Part shown: positions 1-64,000 of the stretch, one piece after another
Layout: every line of letters starts with the position of its first letter
How positions within the stretch are numbered: the stretch's first letter is position 1
Assembly (NCBI GenBank): GCA_965655095.1
Contig: OZ296649.1
Coordinates: 1,178,001-1,242,000 of the forward strand
DNA from: Haplodiscus bocki
Taxonomy: Eukaryota
Length of the DNA stretch: 64,000 bases
Direction: 5' to 3'
Position numbers and translations under genes: made by a program
Notes under the pieces: generated by a model
What the model saw: the letters and a program-made list of their open reading frames with translations, nothing else
Told to the model about the DNA's origin: nothing
Database searches by the model: none

Positions 1-3000
1 ACTTCATGGCGAATGAAAGAAAACATCTCGTTGACTTTAGAAACAAGGGTTTGAAAAAATATTCTACACGCAAATTTGATGCTGCCGCAAAACACACTAC
101 TTTCAAGGTTTCGATTCATGGGAAAAAATGAAATCTTTATCCAGTCTCACAAAAACAGCCAAGAAACACATCAGTCTTGCATTCAAAAGATTTCGAGAAA
201 AAGTGAACATGATCAGTCCATGTTAAATTTCACCACAAAATTATCAAATCTTAGCTTTAATGACCTTTGTCTGAGACCTAAGGTTATCCAAATAATGTGA
301 ATGAATAACGAAATGAAGTAATTTGAGATAAGAAATGAATTACGAGTTATCATGACAAAACAAGAGTTTACAAAAATCTTCTTAACCACATTCAATTCTC
401 TGGATAATTACGTTCTCTCTGTCTTTGATGTGGTCCAGAACGATGACTTTTAATTACGATGAAACGATCTATGTGTTTTTTGTAACAAGATATAACATAT
501 AACAACCAAAAGAGATTCATGAACTCCATTCACATAGTTCTCACGACATTTCGGAGTTAGAAGGAAGATTCAAAAAATGTAATTGAGTATTGAATTGACG
601 TTCTTTGGAAAAAAAGTCTTTTTTTGAAGTTCTTTGGAAAGAAGATATTACAAAAATACTTTTTTTACTCTCAATTTTTTGAATGATTACGTTATTTGTG
701 CCTGATTAGTTTCGGAACACTGACTGTTCTTCTGAAAGAGTTCTAACAAATGGGAGAGAGTCGTGCACTTCATTTACAGGGCTCTCATGCCTTTTTTGCT
801 CCTCATGAAGAGATTCTGGTAAATAATATAGGAGAATACCAACAACATCGAAAACTTTAACAAACTTTTTATCTACCTGAAGAGATTGAGACGCATAGAA
901 TTTAGCATTTTTTTGTTTTCATAGCTCTCAAAAAAATCTATCAATTTGCAAGCCTCAAAAGATTTCTTCCATCGTTATCAAGTTTTATGCGATCTTCAAA
1001 TGCACATTACCTTCAAAAGAAAAACGAAGGAAGCTTTGGTGCTTAAAAGCCACAATTTTCAACAAAGGCAACATCTAGAACAGCTAATCTTCAAACAAAG
1101 TTGAACATGTCGCAAAGCAAAGTAATTTTGGTTCGTGACAAATAGAACTATGAACCTCATTAAAACTCAAAATTGAGTTTTATTGACCGTCCGCTGAGCT
1201 CTAAGGTGTTTCAAGTAATGTGAATCAATATTGAAAGATGCTGTTTGAATGAAAGATTGCATCACAAAATATTGATAAAACAAAAGTAGATATAAAAAAA
1301 TTGAAAATTCTAACCTAAGTTTTTGGATGATTACGTTTTCTGTAATTGAATGAGTGTAAAACGTTGACTGGCATTTTTGTCGAATCAGTCTAGGTAAACC
1401 TTAAGAAACAACTTTAACAACTACAAGAGATTCATGAAGTTCAATTATAGAGATCTCACGACTCTTTCTTGCTCCTTTTGAACCGATTGCAGTGAATAAA
1501 ACTGAAGCTTACCGCAATCACCATCAAATTTGACAAAGTCTTTATCTTCCTTAAGAGATTGGCATACATGGAATATAACGAATTCATTATAAATTAATGG
1601 CTTGCAGAACAAAATTTCTATCAGTTTACAGAGATTCCTAAAACGCGCCATCATCAAAAAATACAACATAGTTTTCATCGTCTTGAAGGGAATGGGAATC
1701 AAAGAAGATAGCATCTTAACTAATATTCAACTTTTTTGATGCCTCTCCGGAAAAACTCTCTACCAGATTGAAAACATTCACTTGCAAACCCTTTTATACT
1801 CCATCATTTTTGAAGTTAATGTATTAACCAAGTGCCTTTCTCTCCTGAAATATTGAAGGAATTTTTGGTGATTGAAAGCCAACATTTTTACCGAAGCAAA
1901 AAGATGGAAAATTTATCTAAACGCAAATTTGATATTGCTGCAATAAAAACTAGTTTTGACGATTCGTTTTTTGGGAAAATACCAATAACCTTATTCAAAC
2001 AAAAAAACGGCCAATGAAACAAGTCATTCTGATTCTGCAATCGAAAGACATAGAAATATCGTGAACATGATTGGTCCATGTTCACCACGAAACCCTCAAA
2101 AAGTAGTTCAATTGACGTTTTTTGAGCCGCAAGGGTATTTTAAGTAATGTGAATGAAAAGTAAAACGATGTTATTCGAGATGAAAAAAGAATCGCGTGAT
2201 ATTATGACAAAAAAAAGAAAATTAGAGATTACAGAAAATTTTATGTATTCAATTCAAGTCTATGGATGATTACGTTCTCTTCGTAAATGATATGGTCTAA
2301 AACAAGGACTGGTAAATACGACAAAGGTATCCAGGTGTTTCTTGTGAAAAGTTATAACAACCAGAAGAGATTCATTCACTTCATTCACAGATCTCTCATA
2401 ACTGTTTCTGGAGCTTTGTGAAACAATTCCGGTAAATAGGATAAAGACACTATGACCATAAACTTTAACAAAGTCGTTATTGTTCTGGAAAGAATCGACA
2501 CATAGATTATGTAAATTTGTTGTTTTTTGAAAGCTTGCTGAAAATCATCTAAATCAGTTTGGAAGCAATCACTGGCAAACCTTTAAAAACGCATCAATAT
2601 TGGAGTTTAAAAATCAATCAAGGGCCATTTTCTACTACAGAGAAATTTAAAAACTTCATGGTGAATGAAAGAAAACAACTCGTTGACTTTAGAAACAAGG
2701 GTTTGAAAAATTATTCTACACGCAAATTTGATGCTGCCGCAAAACACACTACTTTCAAGGTTTCGATTCAGGGGAAAAAATGAAATCTTTATCCAGTCTC
2801 ACAAAAACAGCCAAGAAACACATCAGTCTTGCATTCAAAAGAATTCGAGAAAAAGTGAACATGATCAGTCCATGTTAAATTATACCACAAAATTATCAAA
2901 TCTTAGCTTTAATGACCTTTGTCTGAGACCTAAAGTTATCCAAATAATGTGAATGAATAACGAAATGATGTAATTTGAGATAAGAAATGAATTACGAGTT

Positions 3001-6000
3001 ATCATGACAAAACAAGAGTTTACAAAAATCTTCTTTACCACATTCAATTCTGTGGATAATTACGTTCTTTCTGTAATTGATGTGGTCCAGAACGATGACT
3101 TTTAATTACGATGAAACGATCTATGTGTTTCTTGTAACAAGATATAACATATAACAACCAAAAGAGATTCATGAACTCCATTCACATAGTTCTCACGACC
3201 TTTTGGAGTTAGAAGGAAGATTCAAAAAATGTAATTGAGTATTGAATTGACGTTCTTTGGAAAAAAAGTCTTTCACATGACATAGTGACAAAAGGAAAGA
3301 AGATATTACAAAAATACTTTTTTTACTTTCAATTTTTTGAATGATTACGTTATTTGTGCCTGATTAGTTTTGGAACACTGACTGGTCTTCTGAAAGAGTT
3401 CTAACAAATGGGAGAGAGTCGTGCACTTCGTTTACAGGGCTCTCATGCCTTTTTTTGCTCCTCATGAAGAGATTCTGGTAAACAATATAGGAGAATACCA
3501 ACAACATCGAAAACTTTAACAAAATTTTTATCTACCTGAAGAGATTGAGACGCATAGAATTTAGCATTTTTTTGTTTTCATAGCTCTCAAAAAAATCTAT
3601 CAATTTGCAAGCCTCAAAATATTTCTTCCACCGTTATCATGTTTTATGCGATATTCAAGTGCACTTTACATTCAATTGAAAAGCGAAGGAATATTTGGTG
3701 CTTAAAAGCCACAATTTTCAACCAAGGCAACATCTAGAACAGGTAATCTACACACAAAGTTGAACATGTCGCAAAGCAAAGTAATTTCTTTGTTTCAGTT
3801 AATGGAAAATAGAACTATGAACATCATTAAAACTCAAAAAAAATATTCAACGAATTGGGTCAATCTAATTCCACAATCAAAAGATAGAGATGATCTAAAC
3901 ATGGCTAATCCATGTAAAGGCCAAAAACAAAATAGCTCAAAATTGAGCTTTATTGACCGACCGTTGAGCACTAAGGTGTTTCAAGTAACGCGAATCAATA
4001 TTGAAAGACGCTAATTGAATGAAAGATTGCATCACAAGATATTGATAAAACAAAAGTAGATAAAAAAAAATTGAATATTCTAACCCAGGTTTTTTGGACG
4101 ATTACGTTCTCTGTAATAGAATGAGTGTAAAACGTTGACTGGCATTTTTGCCGAATCAGTCTAGGTAAACCTTGAGGAACAATTTTAACAATTAAGAAAG
4201 ATTCGTGCAATTCACTTATAGAAAACGCACGACTCTTTCCTGCTCTTTTTGAACCAATGGCAGCGAATAAAGTTGAAGCTTACCGCTATCACCATCAAAT
4301 TTGACAAAGTCTTTATCTTCCTTAAGAGATTGGGATGCATAGAATTTAGCATTTTTTTTATAATTTCATAGCCCTCAAAAACATCTTTCAATTTGCAAGC
4401 ATCAAAAGATTTCTTCCATCGTTATCAAGTTTTATGCGATCTTCAAGTGCACTTTACATTCAAATAAAAAACGAAGGAAGCTTTGGTGCTTAAAAGCCAC
4501 ACTTTTCAACAAAGGCAACATCTAGAACAGCTAATCTTCAAACAAAGTTGAACATGTCGCAAAGCAAAGTAATTTCGGTTCGTGACAAATAGAACTATGA
4601 ACCTCATTAAAACTCAAAATTGAGTTTTATTGACCGTCCGCTGAGCTCTAAGGTGTTTCAAAAAATGTGAATCAATATTGAAAGATGCTATTTGAATGAA
4701 AGATTGCATCACAAAATATTGATAAAACAAAAGTAGATATAAAAAAATTGAATATTCTAACCTAAGTTTTTTGGATGATTACGTTTTCTGTAATTGAATG
4801 AGTGTAAAACGTTGACTGGCATTTTTGTCGAATCAGTCTAGGTAAACCTTAAGAAACAACTGTAACAATTACAAGAGATTCATGCAGTTCAATTATAGAG
4901 ATCTCACGACTCTTTCTTGCTCCTTTTGAACCAATTGCAGTGAATAAAATTGAAGCTTACCGCTATCATCATCAAATTTGACAAAGTCTTTATCTTCCTT
5001 AAGAGATTGGGATGCATGGAGTATAACAAATTCATTATAAAATCATGGCTTCCAGAACAAAATTTCTATCAGTTTCCAGAGGTTCCTAAAACGCGCCGTC
5101 ATCGAAAACTACAAAAATGTCTTCATCGTCCTGAAGGGAATGGGACTCATAGAATATAGCAATTTAACTAATTTTCAACTTTTTTGATGTCTCTCAGGAA
5201 AAACTCTCTACCAGTTTGAAAACATTCACTGGCAAACATTTTTATCCTCCATCATTTTTGAAGTTAATGTATTAACCAAGTGCTTTTTTCTCCTGAAATA
5301 ATGAAGGAGTTTTTGGTGAGTGAAAGCCAACATTTTTACCGAAGCAAAAAGGTGGAAAATTTATCTAAACGCCAACTTGATATTGCTGCAGTAAAAACTA
5401 GTTTTGACGATTCGTTTTTTGGGAAAATACCAATAACCTTATTCAAACAAAGAAACGGCCCATGAAACAAGTCATTCTGATTCTGCAATCGAAAGACATA
5501 GAAATATCGTGAACATGATTGGTCCATGTTCACCACGAAACCCTCAAAAAGTAGTTCAATTGACGTTTTTTGAGCCGCAAGGGCATTTTAAGTAATGTGA
5601 ATAAAAAGTAAAACGATGTTATTCGAGATGAAAAAAGAATCGCGTGATATTATGACAAAAAAAAAGAAAATTAGAGATTACAAAAAAGTTTATTTATTCA
5701 ATTCAAGTCTATGGATGATTACGTTCTCTTCGTAAATGATATGGTCTAAAACAAGGACTGGTAAATACGACAAAGGTATCCAGGTGTTTCTTGTGAAAAG
5801 TTATAACAACCAGAAGAGATTCATTCACTTCATTCACAGATCTCTCATAACTGTTTCTGGAGCTTTGTGAAACAATTCCGGTAAATGGGATAAAGACACT
5901 ATGACCATAAACTTTAACAAAGTCGTTATTGTTCTGGAAAGAATCGACACATAGATTATGTAAATTTGTTGTTTTTTGAAAGCTTGCTGAAAATCATCTA

Positions 6001-9000
6001 AATCAGTTTGGAAGCAATCACTGGCAAACCTTTCAAAACACTTCAAAATTGGAGTTTAAAAATCAAGCAAGGGCCATTTTCTACGACAGAGAAATTTAAA
6101 AACTTCATGGTGAATGAAAGAAAACATCTCGTTGACTTTAGAAACAAGGGTTTGAAAAATTATTCTACACGCAAGTTTGATGCTGCCGCAAAACACACTA
6201 CTTTCAAGGTTTCGATTCATGGGAAAAAATGAAATCTTTATCCAGTCTCACGAAAACAGCCAAGAAACACATCGGTCTTGCATTCAAAAGAATTCGAGAA
6301 AAAGTGAAGTTGATCAGTCCATGTTAAATTTCACCACAAATTTATCAAATCTTAGCTTTAATGACCTTTGTCTGAGTCCTAAGGTTATCCAAATAATGTG
6401 AATGAAAAACGAAATGATGTAATTTGAGATAAGAAATGAAATACGAGTTATCATGACAAAACAAGAGTTTACAAAAATCTTCTTTACCACATTCAATTCT
6501 CTGGATAATTACGTTCTCTCTGTAATTGATGTGGTCCAGAACGATGACTTTTAATTACGATGAAACGATCTATGTGTTTCTTGTAACAAGATATAACATA
6601 TAACAACCAAAAGAGATTCATGAACTCCATTCACATAGTTCTCACGACCTTTTGGAGTTAGAAGGAAGATTCAAAAAATGTAATTGAGTATTGAATTGAC
6701 GTTCTTTGGAAAAAAGTCTTTCACATGACATAGTGACAAAAGGAAAGAAGATATTACAAAAATACTTTTTTTACTTTCAATTTTTTGAATGATTACGTTA
6801 TTTGTGCCTGATTAGTTTTGGAACACTGACTGGTCTTCTGAAAGAGTTCTAACAAATGGGAGAGAGTCGTGCACTTCGTTTACAGGGCTCTCATGCCTTT
6901 TTTTGCTCCTCATGAAGAGATTCTGGTAAACAATATAGGAGAATACCAACAACATCGAAAACTTTAACAAAATTTTTATCTACCTGAAGAGATTGAGACG
7001 CATAGAATTTAGCATTTTTTTGTTTTCATAGCTCTCAAAAAAATCTATCAATTTGCAAGCCTCAAAATATTTCTTCCACCGTTATCATGTTTTATGCGAT
7101 ATTCAAGTGCACTTTACATTCAAATGAAAAGCGAAGGAATCTTTGGTGCTTAAAAGCCACAATTTTCAACCAAAGCAACATCTAGAACAGGTAATCTACA
7201 CACAAAGTTGAACATGTCGCAAAGCAAAGTAATTTCATTGTTTCAGTTATTGGCAAATAGAACTAAAAACCTCATTAAAGCTCAAAAAAAAAATTCAACA
7301 AATTGGGTCAATCTAATTCCACAATCAAAAGATAGAGATGATCTAAACATGGCTAATCCATGTAAAGGCCAAAAACAAAATAGCTCAAAATTGAGCTTTA
7401 TTGACCGCCCGTTGAGCACTAAGGTGTTTCAAGTAATGCGAATCAATATTGAAAGATGCTATTTGAATGAGAGATCGCATCACAAGATATTGATAAAACA
7501 AAAGTAGCTAAAAAAAATTGAAGATTCTAACCTAAGTTTTTTGGATGATTACGTTTTCTGTAATTGAATGAGAGTAAAACGTTGACTGGCGTTTTTGCCG
7601 AATCAGTCTAGGTAAACCTTGAGAAACAACTTTAACAACTAGGAGAGATTCATGCAATTCAATTATAGAAAACTCACGACTCTTTCTTGCTCTTTTTGAG
7701 CCGATTGCACCGAATAAAATTGAAGCTTACCGCTATCACCATCAAATTTGACAAAGTCTTTATCTTCCTTAAGAGAGTGGGATGCATGTAGTATAACAAA
7801 TTTATTATAAATTCATGGCTTGCAGACCAAAATTTCTATCAATTTCCAGAGGTTCCTAAAACGCGCCATCATCGAAAAATACAAAAAGGTCTTCATCGTC
7901 CTGAAGGGAATGGGACTCATAGAATATAGCAATTTAACTAATTTTCAACTTTTTTGATGTCTCTCAGGAAAAACTCTCTACCAGTTTGAAAGCATTCACT
8001 GGCAAACATTTTTATCCTCCATCATTTCTGAAGTTAATGTATTAACCAAGTGTTTTTTTCTCCTGAAATAATGAAGGAATTTTTGGTGAGTGAAAGCCAA
8101 CATTTTCACCGAAACAAAAAGATGAAAAATTCATCTAAACGCAAATTTGATATTGCTGCAATAAAAACTAGTTTCGACGATTCGTTTTATGGGAAAATAC
8201 CAATAACCTTATTCAAACAAAAAAACGGCCAATGAAACAAGTCATTCTGATTCTGCAATCGGAAGACATAGAAATAATGTGAGCATGATTAGTCCATGTT
8301 CACCACGAAACCCTCAAAAAGTAGCTCAAATGAGCTTTTCTGGGCTGCGAGGGTATTTCAAGCAATGTGAATGAAAAGTAAAACGATGTTATTCGAGATA
8401 AAAAAAATGAATCGCGTGATATTATGACAAAAAAAAACAAATTTAGAGATTACAAGAAATTTTATTTATTCAATTCACGTCTATGGATGATTACGTTCTC
8501 TGTATATGATGTGGTCTAGAAAAAGCACTGGTAAATACGAAAAAGGGATCCAGGTGTTTCTTGTGAAAAGCTACAACAACCAAAGGAGATTCCTTCACTT
8601 CATTCACAGATCTAACATAACTTTTTCCGGAGCTTTCTGAAACAATTCCAGTAAGTAGGATAAAGACACTATGACCATAGAATTTAACAAAGTCTTTATT
8701 GTTCTGAAAAGAATTGACACATAGATTATGTAAATTTGTTGTTTTTTGAAAGCTTGCTGAAAATCATCTAAATCAGTTTGGAAGCAATCACTGGCAAACC
8801 TTTAAAAAATCCGTCAATCTTGGAGTTTAAAAATCAATCAAGTGCCTTTTTCCACTACAGACAAATTGAAAAACTTCATGGTGAATGAAAGAAAACATCC
8901 GGTTGATTTTAGAAACAAGGGTTTGAAAAATTAATCTACACGCAAATTTGATGCTGCAGCAAAACACACGAATTTCAAGGTTTCGATTCATGGGAAAAAA

Positions 9001-9400
9001 AGTGAAAACTTTATCTAGTCTCACAAAAGTAGCCCAAAAACACATCAGTCTTATCTTGCATTCAAAAGAAATCGAGATAAAGTAAACAAGATCAGTCCTT
9101 GTTAAACTTCACCATAAAATTATCAAATCTTAGCTCTAATGACCTTTGTCTGAGACCTAAGGTTATCCAAGTAAAATGAATGAATAATGAAAGGATGTAA
9201 TTTGAGATAAGAAAAGAATTACGAGTTGTCATGACAAAACAAGATTTTACAGAAATCTTCTTTTACCAAATTCAAGTCTATGGATCATTACGTTCTCTCT
9301 GTACTTGATGTGGTCCAGATCGATGACTTTTAATTACGATGAAACGATCTATGTGTTTCTTGCAAAAAGATATAACAACCAAAAAAGATTGAAGAACTTC
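1..9400 (+). repeat. HOR block 1: three related units of 2652, 3449 and ~2771 bp built from rearranged monomers
   Basis: Near-identical ORF translations start at 76/2728/6177 (spacings 2652, 3449), 1832/5280/8050 (3448, 2770) and 3760/7208 (3448). Private junctions such as ggagttagaaggaagattcaaaaaatg (~554, ~3205, ~6654) and ttcctaaaacgcgcc (~1635, ~5083, ~7853) are shared between units. Confidence 0.9.
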
Positions 9401-12400
9401 ATTCAAAGAGCTCTCATGACTACAACTTGAGTTTGTTTGAAAGTTTTCCGGTAAACAAAATGAAGACAAAATTACCATAAATGTTAACAGGATGTTTAAT
9501 GTTTATTGTACGGAAGAGAATGGACGCATATAAATTGTCCAATTTGCAAATTTTTGATAGCTTGCTGAAAACAAAGGTTTGAAAAGTTAGTCTACACGCA
9601 AATTTGATGCTGTTGCAAAGCACAATCGTTTCAAGGTTTCGATTTATGGGAAAAAACCAGAACCTTATCTAAACTCAAAAAGAAACAGCCGAAGAAACAA
9701 GTCATTCTGATTCTGAATCAAAAGACATAAAGGTAACACAAACTTGATTAGGCCATGTATATCTCGCCATAAAAACCTCAACAATTAGCCTCAAATACTA
9801 TTTGTTTGAACTCTATAAGTATTCCAAGTAAGGTCAAAGTATGTTGAAGAGACGTTAATTGATAAACTACATTGAATAACATGATAGTATGACAAAAGAA
9901 AAAAGATAATACAAAACTTTTCTAACCATTATCAAGTCTATGGACAATTATGTTCTCTTTCTAATTGACGTAGTCTAGAGCGGCGACTGGTAATTACGAT
10001 GAACCGATATAGGTGTTTCTTATGAAAAGTTATAAGAAACTGGAAACATTCCTGAGCTTCATCCACAGAGCTCTCATGACTACAACTCGAACTTTTTGAA
10101 AAAAACTCCAGCAAAAACGATAAAAACAAAATCATCATAAAAGGTACTAAGATCTTTTTTGTGCCGAAGAAAATGAACCTCTAGAAGATGTCAAAATTGA
10201 CTTTTTTCCATAGCTTGCTGAAAACATTCTTTATCATTTTAAAAACATTCACTGGCAAACTTTTAAATAATCCATCATTATCAATGTTTATGTATTAAAC
10301 AAGTACCCTTTTGTACTAATGAAAAATCGATGGAATTTTTGGTGAATGAAAGCCAATTATCTGTTCCCTTTAGATACAAAACTTCCAAAGGGCAGTATAG
10401 ACCCAAACTTGATTCTGCCGCAAAACAAACTAATTTCATCGTTTCAATTCAAGAAAAAAACCAATACCTTATCTAAACTCAAACAAAACAGCTGAAGGAA
10501 CAACTCATTCTGATTTGGAAGTCAAAAGACATAGAGATAACACAAACCTGATTATTGCATGTAAATTTCACCACAAAAAACTCAAAAGCAAGCTCTATTG
10601 ACCTTTCTCTGAGCTCTAGGAGTGTTTCACGTAATGTGAATGCATATTAAAATGATGGCATTTGAGATAGAAAATGAATCAGGTGATAATGTGACACAAA
10701 AAAACAGAGTTAACAAAAAAGTTTTTTACTAAACTCTGGACTATGGTTCAATACGTTCTTTTTGTAACTATTGTGATCTAGAACAATGAGTGGTAATTAC
10801 GATGAACCGAACCAGGTGTTTCCTGTGAAAAAGTTATAACAACCCGAATAGCTTCATGAACTTCATTCAAAGAGCTCCCTTGACTACTTTTCGATGTTTT
10901 TCAAAAAATTACGACAAATTGAATCAAGACAATATCACCAAAAAAACTAAAATTTTTATTGTTCTTAAAAGAATGGACGCATGGAATAAGCCAAAATTTT
11001 TGCTTTTCGATAACTTGCTGAAAAAAAAATCTATAACATTTTCAAAAATTCATTGGCAAATCATCAAAAAACTTTCTTTGATTTTGTATATTAGTCAATT
11101 CAATTTTCTTCCTTTGAGAAACTGAAGGATATTTTGGTGAATATTTTTCGAACAAAAACTTTCGAAGTAATAAAAAGGAAAAAATATCTACACGCAAATC
11201 TAAATATGCCGTAAAACAAACAATTTTCAAATTTTTTTCATGGGAACAAACAAACAAACCTTATCTAAACGAAAAAACAGCGGAAAAAACAAGTCATTCT
11301 GATTCTGCAATCAAAAGACATAGACATAATTAAACATGATAAGTCCTTGTGAGAGTTCACCACAAAAACCTCAAAAGATTGCTAGAATGAAGTTTGTCTG
11401 AGCGAGCTTTAAGGTTGTTTCAAGTAACTTGAAAGAAAAGTAAAATGATGTTATTTGAGAGAAAAATTGAATCACGCGACAGTATGACAACAAAAAAAAA
11501 GAAAAATGGAGTTTACACAAAAGTTTTTTTTACTAAATTCATTTTCTTGGATGACTACTTTCTCTCTGTATTTGACGTGGTCTAAAAAGATGACTGGTAA
11601 TTACGATGAACCGATCTAGGCGTTTCTTGTGAAAAGATATTGCAACCAAAGGAGATTCCTGAACTTGAATTACAGGGCTCTTATGACTACTTCTTCAGTT
11701 TCTTCGAAAGCTTCCGGTAATTAGGACAAAACACAGTATCATCCTGAAATCTAACAAGATCTTCACCGTCCTGAAGGTAATGCGAGTTGAAGAATTCAGC
11801 GATTTTACATTTTATTTTTTTCAATAGCTCGCCAAAGACAAATCGTTACCAATTTGAAAACATTCACTATTAAAATTTAAAAAGTTCAACTAGCTTTTAG
11901 TTTTAAATATTAGTCGATTGCATTTTTTGGAATGAAAAATCGAAGGAAAGTTTGGTGAACAAAGGCCAACATTCTCTTTAGAAGCAAGAAACAAACAAGA
12001 ATCACGAGATAATAAGACAAAAAAAAAGAGTTTATAAAAAAGTTATTTCACTAAATTCAAGATTGTGGATGATTAACTTCTCTTAGTAATTGATGTGGTC
12101 TAGAACGATGATTGTTATTTGCAACGAACCGAGCTAAATGTTTCGTGTGGAAAATTACAACAACCAGAAGAGATTCATCAAATTCATTCGCATAGCTCGC
12201 ATGAATGTATCTCCAACTTTTAAAAAAATCTGGTGAATAAGATAAAGACACTATCACCATAAAAGTTAACAATTTGTTTTCTATCGTCGAAGAGAATGGA
12301 CGCGCAGATTATGTCAAAAATAATATATCCTGATGGCTTGCTGAAAATAATCTGTATCTTTTTGAAAACATTCACTGGCAAATCTTTAAGCAATCCGTCA

Positions 12401-12860
12401 TCATTGAAGTTTATGTATTAGCCAAACGCCTTTTTCTAATAATGAAATATCGAAGGAATTTTTGATGAATAAAAGCCAATATTTTTTTCAGAAGCAATAA
12501 GATGAAAAAGTTATCTGCAGGCAAATTTGAATCTGCTGCAATGAAAAAAAAATTCAACGCATCGTTTTATGGGAAAAACCATTAAATCTTATAAAACCGA
12601 AAAAAAAGCCAAAGAAACAAGTCATTCTGTTTCTGCAACCGAAAGACATAAACATATTCTGAACATGATTAGTCCATGTAAATTTTCACAAAAAACCTCA
12701 AAACTTAGCTCTTATTACTTTTTGTTTCAGCTCTAAAAGTATTTCAAATAAGATGAAGGTATATTGAAGTGATGCTAGTTGAAAACTAAATTGAATCACA
12801 TGATTTTACGAAAAAAGAAAATAAGATATTACCAAAATGTTCAAACTATTATTAAGTCTA
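9400..12860 (+). repeat. Diverged monomeric layer containing two internally deleted monomers
   Basis: Landmarks at ~9595, 10400, 11190 and 12520 have no near-identical partner nearby. Spacings of 656 and 1330 bp imply deletions of ~150 bp (junction ~9570) and ~280 bp (junction ~11990). Confidence 0.8.
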
Positions 12861-53200: not shown

Positions 53201-56200
53201 TGTTTCCGTTGTCTTTGTAATTGATGTGGTCTAAAAAGTTGACTGGTGTCTGCAATCAAACGGTTTCGGTGAATCTTGTGACAAAGTTTTAACAACCTGA
53301 AGAAAATCTTGCACTTCATCAGCAGAGCTCTCAAGACTTATTTTTCGGCAAATTGGAGACAGTGCGAAAAATGGGATAAAACACACTATCGTGATAAAAG
53401 AAAACAATTTCGTCATCGTCCTGAGGCAAATGCGACGTATAGAATACAACCATTGTACTTTTTTCATTCTTCGATATCTCACCGAAAACAAATTTTTACC
53501 AGTTTGAATACATTCACCGGCAAACTTTCAAAAAACTGGATTTAATTTCATAAAATAGTCGAGTGCAATTTTCCCTTTTAAAAAACTAGAAGGAAAATTT
53601 GATAAACAAAATGCAACGTTCAGTTTGAAAACAAAAGTTTTAAAAAGCAATATACTCGCAAAGTTGATTCTGCTGCGAAACAAACTATTGTCATTGCTTC
53701 GCTTTGAGGGAAAAAATTAATAACCTCAATTAGACTTTACGAAATAGCCAAAAAGAAAAATTATTCTAAGTTTGCTTTCAACAGACATGGAGATAACCTA
53801 AACATGATTAGTTCAAGTAGAAGATCACCACATAAACCTCAAAAGATAGCTCTAATGTCCTTTGTCTGAGCTCTAAGGTGAATTCGAACAATTTGAAGGA
53901 AGAGCGAAACAATATTATTTGAATTAAGAAACAAACCAAGTGAAATTATGATTAAAAAAACCAAAAAAAGAGTTCGCACGAAAATTCTTTTACTAAATTT
54001 ATTTTTTGTGAATGATTACCTTCTCTTTGTTCTTGATGCTCTCTAGAATAATGACTGGTAATTACGATCAACCGATCTACCTGTTCCCCGTGAAAAAGCA
54101 CAACAACTACAAGAGATTCAAGAAATTCATTCACAGAGCTCTCATGAATATTCCTGCAATTTTTTGAATATTATTCCGATAAGATAAAGACACTATCACC
54201 ATTAAAGTTAACAAATTTTTTGTCGTGAAGGACAATGGACGCATAGAGTATGTCAAATTTAATGTTCTTCGATATCTTGCTGAAAACAATCTTTACCTTT
54301 TTGAAAACAATCACCGGCAAATCTTTAGGAAAGTCATCACTATTGAAGTTTATATATTAACCAAGTGCCATTTTCTGTTAATGAGAAATTGAATGAAATT
54401 TTGGTGATCAAAAGCCAACATTCCGATACTTTTACAAATAAGAGTCTGAAAATATAATCTACACGCAAATTTGATTCTGCCGCAAAACAAATAAATTTCA
54501 TTGTTTCGATTTTTGGGACAAATCTAATAACCTTACCTAAACTCAAAAAAAGCCAAAGAAACAAGTCATTCTGATTCTGCAATCAAAAGACAAAAAGATA
54601 ACATAAACAATATTAGTCCATGTTGAGGTTCACCACAAAAGCCGCACAAGAGATCTATTGATATTTCACTAAGTTGTAGCAATCCTTCGAGTGGTGTCAA
54701 GCAAGATTGAAAAGATGTTATTTGAAAACTAAACTGAATCACATGAAATATGAAAAAAATATATATTACTAAATTTTTTTACTACTTTCAAATTTGTGAT
54801 TGATTACGTTCCACTTGTAATTGATGTAGTCTAGAACAAAGACTGGTAAATACGATCAACTGGTATAGGTAATTCCTTTGGCGAAATTTAACCAAGCAGA
54901 AGAGATTCATGCACTTCATCAGAAGAACTCTCAAGATTTTTTTAAAAGCATTTTGAAGAGATTGCGGTAAATGGTATAAAACACCTTATCACCATAAGTT
55001 ATAACAAAGTTTTCGTCGTCCTCAAGGGAATGCAACGTACAGAGTGTAGCAGTTTTAATAATTTTCAAACTTCGATATTTCGCGAAACTCAAATCTTTAC
55101 CAGTTTGAAAACATTTACTGGCAAACCCTAATGAAATCTATCAGCATTTATTTTTATATAATAGTCGAAAGCGATTTTCTGTTTTCGAAATATTGAACGA
55201 ATTTTTAATGAAAGAAGGCAACACTTGCCTTGTGAGCATTAGTTTGAACAGACAAAATACATGCAAATTTGATTCTGCCTCAAAACAAACTAATTGCAAT
55301 GTTTCGAGTTTCGGGAAAAAAATTAAAAACCGGATATTAAGTCACAAAAAAGCCAAAGAAACAAGTTCTTCTGATTCTGCAACAAATGACATGGAGAGAT
55401 AACATAAACATGACTATGTCATGTAAAAGTTTACATGAAAACCGCGAAAACGAGCTCTATTGACCTTTCTTTGAGCTTTAAGCGTATTTCAAAGTGGTGT
55501 GAAAGTATTTTGAGAGGATGTAACTTGAAAAATACGTGGAATCACATGATTCTTTGACAAAAGCAAATAGATGATTCAAATTTTTTTTCACTATTTTCAA
55601 ATCTATGGTTGATTAGTTTCTCTTTGTAATTGATGCGGTCTAGATTAATGACTGCTAATTACGATCAACCGGTCTAGAATAAATTTGTCGCCAATTTTCA
55701 CAACCAGCAGAGATTCATGCACTTGATCAACGGAGGTCTCATGAATATTTCTTTAGTTTCTTGAAGAGATCCCGGTAAATAGGATAAAATACAAAATCAT
55801 CATTAAACATAACAAAATCTTCATCGTCCTGAAGGGAATGCGACGTATAAAAATGTCAATTTTACTGTTTTTCAATTTTCGATATCTGGCCGCAAACAAA
55901 TCTTTACAAGTTTGAAAACATTTACTGGCAAACCTTAAAAAAATTATCGATCTTTGATTTTATATTTTAATCGAGTGCATTTTCTATTGTTGAATAATCG
56001 AAGGAAGCTTTGGTGATTGAATGCCAACATTACCTTTTGAAGGAACGGTTCGAAAAGGCAATATGTACGTAAATTTGATTCTGCCGCGAAACAAACAGGT
56101 TTCATTGTTTGCAGTAATTGGAAAACAACTAATACCTTTATCTCAACTAACAAAAACAGCCAACGAAATAAGTCCGTCTGATTCTGCTACAAATGACATG

Positions 56201-59200
56201 GGGATAACATAAACATGACTATTCCATGTAAAGTTCACCACAAAAACCTCAAAAGTTAGCTCTAATGACTTTTTCCTGAGCTCTAAGATTTAGTCAGGTA
56301 ATTTGAATGATTATGGAAAAACGATGATGTTATTTGAGAAAAGAAATGAATCAAAAATTATTATGACAAAAATCGAGAAATAGAGTTTACACGAGAACTC
56401 TTTTACTAAAATAAATTTTATGGATGATCACGTTCCCTTTGTAATTAGTCTGGTCTAGAGCGATGAACGTTAATTACAATCAATCGATCTAGGTAATCCT
56501 TGGGAAAATTTACAATAACCAAAATAGGTTCATGTATTTCTTTCACAGAGCATCCATGAGTATTTGTCGAACTGCTTGAAAAAAATTCCGTGGAATATGA
56601 TAGAAACACTATCACCAAAAAACTAACAATTCGTGTTTCGTCGTGAAAGAGAAAGGGCGCATAGAATATGTCAAACATATTTTTTTCGATAGCTTGATGA
56701 AAACAACGTATATCATTCTGAAAATTTTCACTGGCAAACTCTTAAAAAATTCACCATTTTTGAAGTTTATATATTAACTAAGGGCTTTTCTCTACTAATG
56801 GAAAATTGAACGAAATTTTTGTGAATAAAAGTCAACATTTAGAAACAATAGTTTAAAAATAAAAACTACACGCAAATTTGACTCTGCCGCAAAACAAACC
56901 AAAATCAATGTTTCGATTTAGGGGACAACAACTAAAAACATTATCCAAACTCGAAAAAAAGATAGCCAGAATAACAAGTCGTTATGATACTGCAATCAGG
57001 AGACATAGAGATAACATAAACATGATCAGCCCATGTAAAAGTTCACCACAAAAACCGCAATAAAAGCTATGTTGAACTTCTTTTGAGCTTTGAGGGTGTT
57101 TCATGTGGTGTGAAGGTATACTGAGTTGAGGTTTTTTGAAAACTATATTGAATCACATGATGTTATAACAAAATAAAAAAAAAGATGAAACAAAAATTTT
57201 TTCAAATAATTTCAAGCCTATGGATGTTTCCGTTGTCTTTGTAATTGATGTGGTCTAAAAAGTTGACTGGTGTCTGCAATCAAACGGTTTCGGTGAATCT
57301 TGTGACAAAGTTTTAACAACCTGAAGAAAATCTTGCACTTCATCAGCAGAGCTCTCAAGACTTATTTTTCGGCAAATTGGAGACAGTGCGAAAAATGGGA
57401 TAAAACACACTATCGTGATAAAAGAAAACAATTTCGTCATCGTCCTGAGGCAAATGCGACGTATAGAATACAACCATTGTACTTTTTTCATTCTTCGATA
57501 TCTCACCGAAAACAAATTTTTACCAGTTTGAATACATTCACCGGCAAACTTTCAAAAAACTGGATTTAATTTCATAAAATAGTCGAGTGCAATTTTCCCT
57601 TTTAAAAAACTAGAAGGAAAATTTGATAAACAAAATGCAACGTTCAGTTTGAAAACAAAAGTTTTAAAAAGCAATATACTCGCAAAGTTGATTCTGCTGC
57701 GAAACAAACTATTGTCATTGCTTCGCTTTGAGGGAAAAAATTAATAACCTCAATTAGACTTTACGAAATAGCCAAAAAGAAAAATTATTCTAAGTTTGCT
57801 TTCAACAGACATGGAGATAATCTAAACATGATTAGTTCAAGTAGAAGATCACCACATAAACCTCAAAAGATAGCTCTAATGTCCTTTGTCTGAGCTCTAA
57901 GGTGAATTCGAACAATTTGAAGGAAGAGCGAAACAATATTATTTGAATTAAGAAATAAACCAAGTGAAATTATGATTAAAAAAACCAAAAAAAGAGTTCG
58001 CACGAAAATTCTTTTACTAAATTTAATTTTTGTGAATGATTACCTTCTCTTTGTTCTTGATGCTCTCTAGAATAATGACTGGTAATTACGATCAACCGAT
58101 CTACCTGTTCCCCGTGAAAAAGCACAACAACTACAAGAGATTCAAGAAATTCATTCACAGAGCTCTCATGAATATTCCTGCAATTTTTTGAATATTATTC
58201 CGATAAGATAAAGACACTATCACCATTAAAGTTAACAAATTTTTTGTCGTGAAGGACAATGGACGCATAGAGTATGTCAAATTTAATGTTCTTCGATATC
58301 TTGCTGAAAACAATCTTTACCTTTTTGAAAACAATCACCGGCAAATCTTTAGGAAAGTCATCACTATTGAAGTTTATATATTAACCAAGTGCCATTTTCT
58401 GTTAATGAGAAATTGAATGAAATTTTGGTGATCAAAAGCCAACATTCCGATACTTTTACAAATAAGAGTCTGAAAATATAATCTACACGCAAATTTGATT
58501 CTGCCGCAAAACAAATAAATTTCATTGTTTCGATTTTTGGGACAAATCTAATAACCTTACCTAAACTCAAAAAAAGCCAAAGAAACAAGTCATTCTGATT
58601 CTGCAATCAAAAGACAAAAAGATAACATAAACAATATTAGTCCATGTTGAGGTTCACCACAAAAGCCGCACAAGAGATCTATTGATATTTCACTAAGTTG
58701 TAGCAATCCTTCGAGTGGTGTCAAGCAAGATTGAAAAGATGTTATTTGAAAACTAAACTGAATCACATGAAATATGAAAAAAATATATATTACTAAATTT
58801 TTTTACTACTTTCAAATTTGTGATTGATTACGTTCCACTTGTAATTGATGTAGTCTAGAACAAAGACTGGTAAATACGATCAACTGGTATAGGTAATTCC
58901 TTTGGCGAAATTTAACCAAGCAGAAGAGATTCATGCACTTCATCAGAAGAACTCTCAAGATTTTTTTAAAAGCATTTTGAAGAGATTGCGGTAAATGGTA
59001 TAAAACACCTTATCACCATAAGTTATAACAAAGTTTTCGTCGTCCTCAAGGGAATGCAACGTACAGAGTGTAGCAGTTTTAATAATTTTCAAACTTCGAT
59101 ATTTCGCAAAAATCAAATCTTTACCAGTTTGAAAACATTTACTGGCAAACCCTAATGAAATCTATCAGCATTTATTTTTATATAATAGTCGAAAGCATTT

Positions 59201-59400
59201 TTCTGTTTTCGAAATAATGAACGAATTTTTAATGAAAGAAGGCAACACTTGCCTTGTGAGCATTAGTTTGAACAGACAAAATTCATGCAATTTTGACTCT
59301 GCCTCAAAACAAACTAATTCCAATGTTTCGAGTTTCGGGAAAAACACTAATAACCTTATCTTAACTCACAAAAAAGCCAAAGAAACAAATCCTTCTGATT
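47200..59400 (+). repeat. HOR block 4: 5-mer (A-C-D-E-F) of 4024-4026 bp, three near-identical units
   Basis: ORF series 47143/51169/55193/59217, 47972/51997/56021 and 48829/52854/56878 have spacings of 4024-4026 bp and identical or near-identical translations. Identity to earlier units stops at ~59400 (ctggattctaaagatatagggg). Confidence 0.95.
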
Positions 59401-62400
59401 CTGGATTCTAAAGATATAGGGGTAAAGTAAACCAAATTTGACCATGTAAAACTTAACCACAGAAACTCAAAGGTTACCTCTAATGATGTTTGTCTGAGCT
59501 CAACGGTTTTTTTCAAGTAATTTGATTGAATAATGATAGGAAGTATTTTAAAAAAAGAAATGAATCACGAGATATTATGACAAAAAAATTAGAGTTTACA
59601 AAAAATTCCTTTCCTAAATTCAATTCTATGGATGATTACGTTCTGTTTGTATTTGATGAGGTCTGGAACGATGACTCGTAATTACGCTGAACAAATCTAG
59701 ATGTTGTTCATGAAAAAAAATGATAACCACAAGAGATTCATGAAATTCATTCACAGAGCTCTCTTTACTTTTTCTGGAAATTTGAAAAAGTTTCGGTAGA
59801 TGAGATGAAGATACTTCCACCATAACAATTACCAAATTATTTACTGTCCTGGAAAGTGGGCGCAGAGAATAAGTCGAATTTTTTTCCAAAATCTTGCTGA
59901 AAACAATCTAAATCAAAACTAAAACATTCACTGGCAAACTTTTTAAAAATCCATTTTTGTTGAAGTTTATGTGTTAACCAAGTGCTTTTTTCTGCTAAGG
60001 AAAAAGCAAAGCAATTTTTGGCTGAAAAAAACCAACATTCTGTTCCCTTTAGACATAATAGTTTGAAAAGGTCTCCTACACGCAGGTTTGATTCTGCCGC
60101 AAAACAAATTAGTTTCAATGTTTCGATTTATGGGACAAAAACTAGTAATTTAATATAAACGCAAAAAAAAACAGCTAAGGAAACAAATCATCTTGACTGC
60201 GCAATTAACAGACATACAAATGACATAGACATGATTATTGTATGTTAAAGTTCACCAAAAAATCTCAAAAAAAGCTCTGATGATATTCTGTTGGATCTCT
60301 AAGGTTATTTCAAGTAATGTGATTTAATAATAAAATGATATTATTTGAGATAAGGAATGAATCACGTAGTATTTTGACAGAAAAGTAGAGTTTACAAAAA
60401 AAACCTTTTAATAAGTTCAAGTCTATGGATCACTACGTTCTTTCTGTAATTGATGTGGTCTGAAATGATGACTAGTATTTACGACGAACCGATCTAGGTA
60501 TTTCTTGCGAAGCGTTATAACAACCAAAAGAGATTGATGAACTTCAATTTCAGAGCTTTAATGACTATTTTTCGAGTTTCTTTGAAAGAATTCCGGTAAA
60601 TAGGATAAAAACAGTGTCAACATAAAAGTTAATCTATTCTTTATTGCCCCGAAGTGAATGGACGCATAGAATATGTCAAATTTAATCTTCTTCAATAGCT
60701 TCTCGAAGACCATCAATACCTTTTTGGAAACATTCACCGGCAAACTTTAGAAAAAACCATCGATTTATAAGTTTATATTTCAATCAAGTGCCTCTTTCTA
60801 CCACTGAAAATCGGAAAGACTTTTTGGTGAATGCAAGCAAACATTCCGCTCACTATAGAAACAGTCGTTTGGAAAGGTAGTCTACACGCAAATTCGATCC
60901 TGCTGAAAAACAATCTGTTTTCAATGTTCCGATTTATGGGACAAAAACTAATAAAGTGAACTGAATTAAAAAAAACAGCCAAGGAAACAAGTCATTCTGA
61001 TTGTGCAATTAAAAGACATAGACATAACCTAAATATTAATAGTCCATGTGAAACTTAACCACAAATACTACAAAAGTGAGCTCTATTGATATTTTTCTGA
61101 GCTTTGAGTGTACTTCAAAGTGGTGTGAAAGTATTTTGAGAAGATGAAACTTGAAAAATCGGTAATCACATGATTTTTTCACAAAAGCAAAATGGTAGAT
61201 TCAAAAATTTTTTTACTACTTTCAAATCAATGGTTAAATATATTCTCCTTGTAATTGATGTAGTTTAAAACAAAGATTGGTAATTACGATCAGCCGGTCT
61301 AAGTGATTCCTTTGGCGAAACTCTAACCAGCAGAAGAGATTCATGAAATTCATTTAGAGAGCGCTCTTGACTTTTTCTGGAACTTTTTGTAAAAATTCCG
61401 GTAGATGAGAGAAAGACACTATCATCTTAAAGTTTAACAAATTGTTTTATGTCCTGAAGAGAATGGACGCGGAGAATATGTCAGTAAATTTTTTTCCGAA
61501 AGCTTGCCGAAAATCATCAATACCATTTTGAAAACATTCTCTGGCGAACTTTTAAAATATCCAAGAATATTGAAGTTATATATTAACCAAATGCTTTCTT
61601 CTACTACTGAAAAACTGAAAGACTTTTTCGTGAAAAGAAGCAAACATTCCGTTAATTTCAGAAAGAAGGGTTTGAAAAGGTAGTCTACACTCAAGTTTGA
61701 TTCTGCCGCAAAACAAAGTAACTTCAATGTTTCCATTTATGGGACAGAAACGAACAACCTTTTCTCAACTGACCAAATCAGCCAAATAAACCAGTCAATC
61801 TGATACCTCAAGCCGAAGACACAGAGGTATTCTAAATATGATTAGTCCATGTATATTTCACCAAAAAAACCTCAAAAAAAAGCTCTGATGACATTCTGTT
61901 GGATCTCTAAAGTTATTTCAAGTAATGTGAACGAATATTAAAATGATGTTATTTGAGATACAAACTGAATCACGTGATATTTTGTTAAAAAAAGAAGAAT
62001 AGAATTTACAAAAAAAATCTTTTACCAAAGTCAAGTCATTGGATGATTACGTGCTCTTTGTAAGTGATATGTTCTAGAACGATAATAGTGATTACGATCA
62101 ACTGGTCTACCTGACTCTTGTGTGAAAATTTCAAAAGCACAAGAGATCCGTGCACTTCAATGACAAAGCTTTTATGACTATTTTTTTTAGCTTTTCGAAG
62201 AGATTCTCGTAAAAAGGATAAAACACACTATCATCAAAGAAGATGGCAGCTTCTCTATCGTCCCGAAGGGAATGAGACGCATAGATTATCGCAATTTTAC
62301 TGTTTCGTATTTTTCGACAGCTTGCTGAAAACAATTTTTATCATTTTGAAAACATTTTCTGGCAAACCTTTAAAAAAACCATCAATATTGAAGTTACATA

Positions 62401-64000
62401 TTAACCAAGTGTCTTCGTTTAGTACTGAAAAACTGAAAAATTTTTTGGTGAATAAAAGCACACATTCCGTTCATTTTAGAAAGAAGGGTTTGAAAAGGTA
62501 GTCTACGCTCAAGTTTGATTCTGCCGCAAAATACAGTAACTTCATCGTTTCCATTTATGGGACAGAAACGAACAACCTTTTCTAAACTGACAAAATCAGC
62601 CAAGGAAACGAGTCAGTCTGGTTCCGCAAGCCAAAGACACAGAGAAAACCTAAACATGATTAGTCCATGTAAATTTCACCAAAAAAACCGCAAAAAATAG
62701 CTCTGATGACATTCTGTTGGATTTCTAAGGTTATTTCAAAAAACGTGAATGAATATTAAAATGATGTTATTTGAGATACAAAATGAAGCACTTGATAATA
62801 TTGTAATAAAAGGGGAATGGAAATTGCCAAAGAATCTTTCACTAAATTCAAGTCAATAGATGATTACGTGCTCTTTGTAAGTGATGTGGTCTAGAACGAT
62901 GAATAGTGATTATGATCAACTGGTCTGCGTGATTGTTGTGGGAAAATTTCAACAACTGCAAGAGATCCGTGCACTTCGATAACAGAGATTCCATGACTAT
63001 TTCCTTAGCTTTTCGAAGAGATTCCCGATAAAAAGATATCTCACACTATCATAAAAAAGAGCAACTTCTTTATCGTCCACAAGCGAAAGAGACGCAGAGA
63101 TTATCGCAATTTTATTATTTTTTATTCTTGGATGGCTTTCTGAAACAAAATTTTTGTCATTTTGAAAACAATCAGTGGTAATACCTAACAGAAACTACCA
63201 TCAATCAATTTTATCTAATAGTAAACTGCAAATTCTTTAAATGAGAAATTGAAGAAAAGTTGATGAACGAAAGCCAACAATCTTTTTAGAAGCAGTAGTT
63301 TGAAAAAACAATTTTGGCAAACCTTAAAAAATCCATCTTTTTTGGAACTTTTTATAATAAACAAGAGCTTTTTTCTACTGATGGAAGATTGAAGAAAATT
63401 TTGGTGAACAAAAACCATCGTTCCGTTTCATTTAGAAACAATAGTTTTAAAAGGTAACCTACACGCAAATTTGATTCTGCCGCAAAACAGACTAATCTCA
63501 TTTTCAATGTAGGGGAATAAACCCAATAATGTTATCTCAACGCCAAAAATTAGCCAACGAAACAGGTCATTCTTATTACGCATTCGAAAGGCATAAAGAT
63601 AGCCTAAACATGATTAGTCTATGTGAAAGTTTACCACAAAAACCTCAAAAAACAACTCTAAGGACCTTTTTTGAGCTCCTAAGATTTTTCAATTAATGTG
63701 AGTGAATATCAAGACGATAATATTTGAGTTGAAAAAACGAATCACGTGACATTAAAACAAAAAAGAGAGAAAAGGAGTTCACAAAAATATATTTTGCTAA
63801 AATCAAGTCTTTGGATGATTACGTTCTCTTTGTAATTGATGTAATCTAGAAAGTTGACTGGTATTTTCGATCAACCGGTTCAGTTGATTCTTGTGGCAAA
63901 GTTTTAACAACCAGAAGAGATTGATTCACTTCATTAGGAGAACTTTCTTTACAATTTCTTTTGCTTTTTGAAAAGATTTCGGTGAGTTGGATAAAACACA
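59400..64000 (+). repeat. Diverged monomeric layer with a one-monomer tandem duplication and an internal ~150-bp duplication
   Basis: Landmarks are at ~60078, 60884, 61687, 62505 and 63461. The monomers at ~61.7 and ~62.5 kb share private sequence (gtttccatttatgggacagaaacgaacaaccttt). The last spacing is ~956 bp. Confidence 0.8.

What the first reader, a model, noticed from the sequence alone, without database searches (positions are those of the whole stretch)
1..64000. Layered ~805-bp satellite with four different HOR architectures in 64 kb: candidate centromeric/pericentromeric array
Seen: one long monomer forms 3/4-mer, 3-mer, 6-mer and 5-mer HOR blocks with near-identical units. Much more diverged monomers lie between and beside the blocks, all co-oriented and with no insertions. 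Established: homogeneous HORs flanked by diverged monomeric layers is the organisation of primate alpha satellite (171-bp monomer). Inference: this is an analogous system with a much longer monomer, where several local amplifications sit side by side. I do not recognise the family, so it may be undescribed. Centromere function cannot be shown from sequence.
Basis: partly seen in the sequence, partly recalled or inferred. Interest (0 to 1): 0.7.

Follow-up and report, generated by a model that had tools for sequence, protein, structure and literature searches.

The report
Single-locus 805-bp higher-order satellite array
The whole window is non-coding tandem DNA made of very old ~805-base units that were later re-copied locally in blocks of three to six units; it occurs at one place in this 1.5-Gb animal genome, and nothing found here marks it as a centromere.

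Summary
All 64 kb are tiled head to tail, on one strand, by a ~805-bp AT-rich non-coding monomer. No foreign insert lies inside the window. Monomers are only about 64-70% alike. Multi-monomer units repeat at much higher identity:
- 3.45-kb and 2.65-kb units: 90-97%
- 2.3-kb unit (5 copies): 92.5-97.4%
- 4.84-kb 6-mer: 98.9%
- 4.02-kb 5-mer (3.2 copies): 98.1-98.7%
- a decayed 3.46-kb "ghost" unit: 77%

The window is part of a 247-kb array (about 200 kb of satellite) at 1.04-1.29 Mb of a 151.7-Mb scaffold. The array is a patchwork of many small blocks of 2-5 copies separated by old monomers. It has no large homogeneous core.

Exhaustive motif searches place the family at this locus only. The monomer has no sub-repeat, gene, RNA family, transposon likeness, conserved box or dyad symmetry. 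Mosaic monomers with sharp switch points point to out-of-register exchange.

Best reading: an old, locus-specific long-monomer satellite that grows by local unequal exchange. The alpha-satellite analogy holds for layout only, and a centromere role is unsupported. The scan has noted similar single-locus layered arrays elsewhere in this genome.

The parts
1..9310 (+). '3/4-mer' block. A 3.45-kb unit of about 4.3 monomer equivalents, several internally deleted, in about 2.7 copies. The first 621 bp also belong to a 2.65-kb variant that continues upstream of the window.
   Evidence: 852-4369 vs 4297-7816 is 95.5% identical; the third copy is about 90%; 1-621 vs 2653-3273 is 97.3%.
9311..12964 (+). 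Old diverged monomers (about 4.5), with no close partner.
   Evidence: the full-length monomers have best matches of 0.71-0.76; one 264-bp partial piece (9311-9574) reaches 0.84.
12965..24948 (+). '3-mer' block. A 2.25-2.32-kb unit of two full monomers plus one lacking profile positions about 86-257, in 5.2 copies.
   Evidence: pairwise unit identity is 92.5-97.4%.
24949..31460 (+). Decayed 'ghost' higher-order repeat: old monomers with a faint 3.46-kb period.
   Evidence: partners at about 3.46-kb offset are 0.77-0.81; the two units are 76.7% identical.
31461..41160 (+). 6-mer block: a 4.84-kb unit in 2 copies. The five-monomer core B-C-D-E-F is nearly identical; the first monomer differs between copies.
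   Evidence: core 98.9%, full units 95.9%; monomer partners 0.979-1.000.
41161..45986 (+). Variant 6-mer (4.83 kb) that bridges the 6-mer and the 5-mer. It contains a C/D hybrid monomer at 43565-44372.
   Evidence: 85-87% to the canonical 6-mers; the hybrid is C-like up to profile column about 500 and D-like after it.
45987..58850 (+). 5-mer block: a 4.02-kb unit in 3.2 copies. It is the youngest layer in the window.
   Evidence: 98.1-98.7% between units; monomer partners up to 1.000; 4024-4026 bp is the commonest k-mer spacing.
58851..64000 (+). Old diverged monomers (about 6.5). The array continues beyond the window end.
   Evidence: best matches are 0.74-0.86; the array runs on to scaffold position 1,288,079.

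Best explanation
This is an old, non-coding, locus-specific long-monomer satellite (a macrosatellite-type array), not a gene array and not recognisably a transposon derivative. A ~805-bp AT-rich unit was amplified long ago into an array that now holds about 200 kb of satellite. Its monomers have since drifted to about 64% identity.

Since then the array has turned over only locally. Out-of-register exchange between neighbouring monomers (unequal sister-chromatid or homologue crossing-over, or gene conversion) duplicated or deleted segments of 2-7 monomers. This made many small higher-order blocks of different unit length and age next to untouched old monomers.

Shown here: the tiling, the single orientation, the block structure and identities, the single locus, the mosaic monomers, and the later clean transposon insertions. 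Inferred: the exchange mechanism, the neutral or heterochromatic status, and that it is not the centromere.
For: Tiling and orientation:
- 105 pieces in the window and 338 in the whole array, all on +.

Non-coding:
- Stop codons occur at the density expected from composition in all six frames, and the longest consensus ORF is 109 aa.
- No Pfam match at E <= 0.1, no Rfam family, no tRNA.

Block identities:
- 76.7% to 98.9% in distinct age classes.

The whole array is a patchwork:
- Units of about 0.79, 1.58, 1.82, 2.07, 2.3, 2.36, 2.6, 3.05, 3.17, 3.45, 3.82, 3.98, 4.02, 4.84 and 6.1 kb, mostly 2-5 copies each.
- About 142 kb lies in young blocks and about 83 kb in old monomers, and the two alternate.

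Single locus:
- Two DNA searches of the 1.5-Gb genome hit only scaffold C2 at 1.04-1.29 Mb.
- Exhaustive 24-nt motif searches at up to 3 mismatches gave 96 of 96 and 65 of 68 matches inside the array, with reversed-pattern controls of 0-1.

Exchange:
- Monomer D equals B over its first ~200 columns (96-100%) and is C-like in the middle.
- The 3' half of the 5-mer's G monomer equals C at 98-100%.
- 43565-44372 is a C/D hybrid.

Presence in reads:
- Short contigs from four runs (two samples, one study) hold 71-82% of sampled words and tile 39001-45000. One contig joins 43829 back to 39001, as expected for a 4.83-kb tandem period.
Against: - No functional data of any kind exist: no RNA run, no chromatin data and no cytology.
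- A chromosome-specific centromere can be a single-locus long-monomer satellite, as in Vicia faba (PMC5895790). Single-locus status therefore does not exclude a centromere.
- The array lies near one end of a chromosome-scale scaffold, which would fit a telocentric chromosome.
- The origin of the monomer is unknown.
- The long-range assembly could not be checked with long reads. Only short contigs were available.
Confidence: 0.78

Rival explanations
1. The array is the functional, chromosome-specific centromere (or its immediate pericentromere) of a telocentric or acrocentric chromosome, and CENP-A nucleosomes sit on the youngest higher-order blocks.
For: - Higher-order blocks lie among older co-oriented monomers.
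- It is AT-rich at 32% GC.
- It lies at 0.7-0.85% of a 151.7-Mb scaffold.
- The surroundings are transposon- and repeat-rich, with no recognised host gene within 33 kb on either side.
- Single-locus long-monomer satellites are proven CenH3 sites in Vicia faba (PMC5895790).
Against: - There is no large homogeneous core. Blocks have 2-5 copies, and 64-75% old monomers are interleaved all along the array.
- It holds only about 200 kb of satellite on a 151.7-Mb scaffold.
- No conserved box survives re-phasing, and there is no dyad-symmetry excess (z = +1.7).
- Earlier unchecked notes of this scan list many comparable private arrays elsewhere in this genome, so the layout is not distinctive.
- The scaffold end carries no assembled telomere, so the true distance to the chromosome end is unknown.
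Confidence: 0.08
2. The monomer is a decayed piece of a mobile element, for example a Maverick/Polinton end or gene, amplified in place. Earlier notes report this for other arrays of this genome.
For: - Two Polinton/Maverick copies lie inside the array and a related one lies just left of it.
- Earlier notes describe Maverick-derived satellites elsewhere in this genome.
Against: - blastn (word size 9) and tblastx of the consensus dimer against all 114 kb of non-satellite sequence in the region found only the array's own left edge. The other tblastx hits, to a Polinton copy and to the left flank, were marginal (E about 0.002, 36% over 36 aa).
- The profile search found nothing in the inserts.
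- Genome-wide DNA searches found no dispersed copies.
- The three inserts each split one monomer cleanly, so they arrived after the array existed.
- No ORF of the monomer matches Pfam.
Confidence: 0.1
3. The block structure is an assembly artefact: a simpler array falsely expanded or shuffled.
For: Long satellites are error-prone to assemble. No long reads were available to span the blocks.
Against: - Copies differ by 1-8% with block-specific variants, and hybrid monomers form consistent junctions.
- Old unique monomers anchor every block.
- Contigs of a second sample match many pieces with 0-5 differences.
Confidence: 0.03

Closest known systems
Long-monomer satellites of Vicia faba (VfSat families, monomers 687-2033 bp; PMC5895790)
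   Same: AT-rich, non-coding, kilobase-scale monomer with no internal sub-repeats. No likeness to other genomic sequence. Mostly a single locus per family. Strand asymmetry in base composition occurs in some of those families and here (A 37.5% vs T 30.5%).
   Different: Those are plant repeats of megabase scale, described from consensus and FISH. Four of them are shown to bind CenH3. Here the array holds about 200 kb of satellite, its monomers are far more diverged, its fine structure is a patchwork of small higher-order blocks, and no chromatin or cytological data exist.
Primate alpha satellite higher-order repeat arrays
   Same: Head-to-tail co-oriented monomers that differ by 20-40% within a unit. 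Multi-monomer units 95-100% alike. Older monomeric DNA beside young blocks. Hybrid monomers from out-of-register exchange.
   Different: Alpha satellite has a 171-bp nucleosome-length monomer, megabase arrays of hundreds to thousands of units, one dominant active array per centromere with symmetric older layers, family members on all chromosomes and a CENP-B box. Here the monomer is 805 bp with no sub-period, there are 2-5 copies per block, old and young stretches alternate, there is one locus, and there is no conserved box.
Locus-specific macrosatellites (e.g. human DXZ4, D4Z4; from my own knowledge and the review PMC8122249)
   Same: Large repeat unit, one or few loci, an array of tens to hundreds of kb, and copy-number change by unequal exchange.
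   Different: The human examples are GC-rich, quite homogeneous, and often carry a gene or CTCF sites. This array is AT-rich, gene-less and extremely diverged at the monomer level.
Chromosome-specific centromeric satellites of potato and chicken (from my own knowledge; potato is cited within PMC5895790)
   Same: A private kilobase-unit satellite confined to one chromosome.
   Different: Those arrays are highly homogeneous, young, often retrotransposon-derived, and shown to bind CENH3/CENP-A. None of these holds or could be shown here.

Membership tests
Satellite DNA with higher-order repeat organisation | Long head-to-tail array of one monomer family in one orientation | tested here: met
   105 of 105 pieces in the window and 338 of 338 in the 247-kb array are on +; gaps are at most 20 bp inside the window.
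Satellite DNA with higher-order repeat organisation | Units of several monomers much more alike than the monomers within a unit | tested here: met
   Monomers are 0.60-0.70 alike; units are 92.5-98.9% alike.
Alpha-satellite-type centromeric array | Large homogeneous core of many unit copies flanked by progressively older layers | tested here: not met
   Blocks have 2-5 copies. Old (64-80%) and young stretches alternate along the whole array.
Alpha-satellite-type centromeric array | Nucleosome-length basic monomer | tested here: not met
   No internal period or self-similarity in the 808-bp consensus. The best self-hit is 14 bp at E = 0.22.
Centromeric satellite (any) | Association with CENP-A/CenH3 chromatin, or position at the primary constriction | not testable with these tools
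   No ChIP, CUT&RUN or cytological data are reachable. The runs found are DNA-type contigs only.
Centromeric satellite (any) | Conserved protein-binding box or excess dyad symmetry (frequent but not universal) | tested here: not met
   The box at the monomer junction seen disappears after re-phasing and independent alignment: maximum 0.832, equal to the 95th percentile of column permutations. The DNA fold z-score is +1.7.
Locus-specific long-monomer satellite / macrosatellite | Unit of about 0.7 kb or more, tandem, confined to one or few loci | tested here: met
   The unit is about 789-808 bp. All DNA-search hits, and 161 of 164 motif matches, lie at C2 1.04-1.29 Mb.
Transposon-derived satellite (e.g. 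Maverick/Polinton-derived arrays noted elsewhere in this genome) | Monomer alignable to part of a mobile element at DNA or protein level | tested here: not met
   blastn and tblastx against the inserted Polintons and the flanks gave nothing significant. Pfam gave nothing. No curated repeat library was available, so distant origins remain possible.
Tandem gene array (protein or RNA genes) | An intact or decayed gene in each unit | tested here: not met
   Stop density is random in six frames. There are 0 Rfam families and 0 tRNAs.

The most novel reading that the evidence does not exclude
This genome may use private, chromosome-specific long-monomer satellites as centromeres. On that reading, this 805-bp array would be the centromere of a telocentric chromosome, with kinetochore chromatin on its youngest 5-mer/6-mer or right-hand 2.3-6.1-kb blocks. 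It would be the first centromere sequence described for this little-studied animal lineage.
Probability: 0.08. Interest if true: 0.6.

Novelty: new member of a known kind. Interest (0 to 1): 0.3.

Why it matters
As it stands, this is a clean and unusually legible record of how a satellite evolves when homogenisation is weak. It holds very old monomers, a decayed ghost higher-order repeat, and at least four younger amplifications of different unit length, with mosaic monomers marking the exchange points. That is useful as a worked example, and for repeat annotation of an under-studied animal genome that seems rich in private macrosatellites. It would matter more only if chromatin or cytological data tied it to the centromere.

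Tried and rejected
- **Tandem Repeats Finder** found nothing because its longest period is 500 bp. I used k-mer spacing, lag identity and a profile instead.
- **Coding or RNA origin** is rejected. ORFs are few and short, Pfam is blank, stop density is random, and there is no Rfam or tRNA match.
- **Hidden short monomer** is rejected.
- **Maverick/Polinton or flank origin** is rejected at blastn and tblastx sensitivity.
- **A conserved box at the monomer junction** looked significant at first: 0.89 against a 99.9th percentile of 0.878. It was an artefact of local-alignment ends and of a short sequence overlap between the two ends of the profile. After re-phasing by 400 columns and MAFFT alignment, no window exceeds the 95th percentile.
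- **Dyad symmetry** is rejected.
- **An underlying dimer** (another first-reader note) is clear in the left sub-domain outside the window: identity 0.81 at lag 2 vs 0.71 at lag 1. It is only marginal in the domain that holds the window: 0.686 vs 0.662.
- **Relatives elsewhere**: exact-motif scans of the metagenome and viral collections gave 0.
- **Long-range assembly check** failed because only 150-580-bp contigs exist for the runs.
- **Organism**: I did not establish it myself. Earlier notes call it an acoel worm; one says coral.
Full report
**What is in the window**

The window is 32% G+C with a steady excess of A over T on the + strand. Tandem Repeats Finder reports nothing because its longest period is 500 bp. 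K-mer spacing and lag identity do show a base period of about 805-808 bp and strong spacings of 4024-4026, 4841, 3448 and 2248-2253 bp.

A profile built from 59 full-length copies tiles positions 4-64000 with 105 pieces. All are on the + strand, and no gap exceeds 20 bp. Only 25 of 63,986 15-mers have a reverse-complement partner.

**Higher-order structure**

On profile match columns, a monomer is typically 0.60-0.70 identical to the others. Partners at fixed multi-monomer offsets are far closer. I checked unit identities by global alignment or BLAST.

| Window span | Unit | Copies | Identity between units |
|---|---|---|---|
| 1-9310 | 3.45 kb (about 4.3 monomer equivalents, several internally deleted) | about 2.7 | 95.5%; third copy about 90% |
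| 1-621 (continues upstream) | 2.65-kb variant | - | 97% |
| 12965-24948 | 2.25-2.32 kb (one of three monomers lacks about 170 bp) | 5.2 | 92.5-97.4% |
| 24949-31460 | decayed 3.46-kb unit | 2 | 76.7% |
| 31461-41160 | 4.84-kb 6-mer | 2 | five-monomer core 98.9% |
| 41161-45986 | variant 6-mer | 1 | 85-87% to the canonical 6-mers |
| 45987-58850 | 4.02-kb 5-mer | 3.2 | 98.1-98.7% |

Old monomers with best matches of 0.72-0.81 fill 9311-12964 and most of 58851-64000. 'Near-identical' therefore holds for the 6-mer and 5-mer, and less so for the other two blocks.

**Evidence for exchange**

Monomer types are mosaics with sharp switch points:
- Type D equals type B over its first ~200 columns (96-100%) and is C-like in the middle.
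- The 5-mer's second monomer has a 3' half 98-100% identical to type C.
- 43565-44372 is C-like up to column about 500 and D-like after it.

These are the expected footprints of out-of-register crossing-over or conversion between neighbouring monomers. The exact path from 6-mer to 5-mer cannot be reconstructed uniquely.

**Not a gene, an RNA, a hidden short repeat or a recognisable transposon**

- Stop codons occur at the density expected from base composition in all six frames. The consensus has no ORF above 109 aa.
- The five longest ORFs have no Pfam match at E <= 0.1.
- No Rfam family or tRNA is present.
- The consensus has no internal period.
- blastn and tblastx of the consensus against all non-satellite DNA of the region found only the array's own edge.
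- A monomer folded as single-stranded DNA is no more structured than shuffles (z = +1.7).
- An apparently conserved ~40-bp box at the monomer junction vanished when monomers were re-cut 400 columns away and aligned independently. It was an alignment-edge artefact.

**Wider context**

The window is scaffold C2:1,178,001-1,242,000 of a 1.50-Gb assembly; C2 is 151.7 Mb long. I fetched 314 kb around it.

The array runs from about 1,041,250-1,041,400 to 1,288,079. That is 247 kb, of which about 200 kb is satellite, in 338 profile hits all on +. Three inserts of 18.3, 16.8 and 11.2 kb interrupt it. Each splits one monomer cleanly, since the two halves add up to one monomer.

Two of the inserts are Polinton/Maverick elements, with protein-primed polymerase B, rve integrase and a double-jelly-roll capsid protein. 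One of them has 1.3-kb terminal inverted repeats 99.8% alike and a 6-7-bp target duplication. They therefore arrived after the array existed.

The array has two sub-domains:
- Left, 1.041-1.121 Mb: 789-bp monomers, median identity 0.76, with a clear dimer signal.
- Right, 1.132-1.288 Mb (contains the window): 795-808-bp monomers, median identity 0.64.

Along the whole array, small blocks alternate with stretches of old monomers. Their unit lengths are about 0.79, 1.58, 1.82, 2.07, 2.3, 2.36, 2.6, 3.05, 3.17, 3.45, 3.82, 3.98, 4.02, 4.84 and 6.1 kb, mostly in 2-5 copies. About 142 kb is young and about 83 kb old. There is no single large homogeneous core. The largest related young domain is about 40 kb, at 1.247-1.287 Mb.

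**One locus only**

Two DNA searches of the whole genome hit only this locus. Exhaustive searches for two 24-nt monomer motifs with up to three mismatches gave 96 of 96 and 65 of 68 matches inside the array. All matches inside the array are on +, and reversed-pattern controls gave 0-1. Exact-motif scans of the metagenome and viral collections gave nothing.

**Position on the chromosome**

(TTAGGG)8 occurs at the start of scaffold C6. On C2 it occurs only interstitially, at 16.13 Mb. The ends of C2 are therefore not shown to be telomeres, and the true distance of the array from the chromosome end is unknown. The 33-kb flanks hold Polinton copies, an unidentified repeat and a 1.52-kb tandem repeat. 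They hold no recognisable host gene.

**Reads**

Four runs (two samples, one study) hold 71-82% of the sampled words of a 5-mer unit. Only short contigs of 150-580 bp are available. They tile 39001-45000, many with 0-5 differences, and one joins 43829 back to 39001, as expected for a 4.83-kb tandem period. This shows that the sequence exists in reads, including in a second sample. It cannot verify block order. No RNA run holds the stretch.

**Interpretation**

The best reading is an ancient, locus-specific, non-coding long-monomer satellite with weak homogenisation. It is reshaped by occasional local unequal exchanges that leave small higher-order blocks of different ages.

The closest described analogues are the AT-rich, mostly single-locus 0.7-2.0-kb satellites of Vicia faba. 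Those likewise have no sub-repeats and no likeness to other genomic sequence, and only four of the long-monomer families proved to be CenH3-bound (PMC5895790).

The alpha-satellite comparison holds for layout, not for scale, monomer size, distribution or layering. A centromere role is neither shown nor excluded, and I put it at about 8%.

Earlier unchecked notes of this scan describe several other private, layered macrosatellites in the same genome, some derived from Maverick pieces. I tested that origin for this array and did not find it. Those notes also call the organism an acoel worm (one says coral), which I did not test. Two literature searches on acoel satellites, karyotypes and centromeres listed no paper on such a family. 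Dfam, Repbase and nt were not available, so 'undescribed' remains likely but unproven.

Noticed in passing
L025/L013/L014 = scaffold C2:1,065,939-1,084,226 (outside the window): An 18.3-kb Polinton/Maverick sits inside the satellite. It has a 1071-aa protein-primed polymerase B, an rve integrase and a double-jelly-roll capsid protein. Its terminal inverted repeats are at least 1.3 kb long and 99.8% alike, and it has a 6-7-bp target duplication. It splits one monomer cleanly, so it is a very recent arrival.
   Followed up: partly
L026/L015 = C2:1,088,961-1,105,718, and L011/L023 = C2 about 1,019,000-1,037,000: A second related Polinton (16.8 kb, opposite orientation, inverted repeats about 89% alike) lies only 4.7 kb from the first. 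A third related copy lies just left of the array. That makes three copies of one family within 90 kb, which may reflect a liking for this satellite or region.
   Followed up: partly
L016/L028 = C2:1,121,064-1,132,220: An 11.2-kb insert (36.5% GC) splits a monomer cleanly but has no terminal inverted repeats and no Pfam match. It shares ORFs with DNA at C2:1,008,000-1,013,000, where one ORF weakly resembles the adenovirus-type protease (E = 0.0023, below the Pfam cut-off).
   Followed up: partly
L033/L022/L034 = C2 about 1,297,000 to beyond 1,322,000: A different tandem repeat with a 1.52-kb unit starts about 9 kb right of the array and runs for at least 25 kb. Its units carry recurring 100-178-aa ORF fragments with no Pfam match.
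   Followed up: partly
L012/L023 = C2 about 1,037,000-1,041,400: A 30-bp minisatellite lies directly left of the array. It reads as a 10-residue peptide repeat on the minus strand.
   Followed up: no
C2:1,041,404-1,121,063 (left sub-domain of the same array): A distinct subfamily with 789-bp monomers is more homogeneous (median identity 0.76) and shows a clear alternating dimer pattern: 0.81 at lag 2 vs 0.71 at lag 1. It carries a diagnostic G in place of A in the best-conserved motif.
   Followed up: partly
Genome-wide: C2:16,130,692 and the start of C6: TTAGGG-type telomere repeats begin scaffold C6. Scaffold C2 has no (TTAGGG)8 at either end, only an interstitial tract at 16.13 Mb.
   Followed up: no
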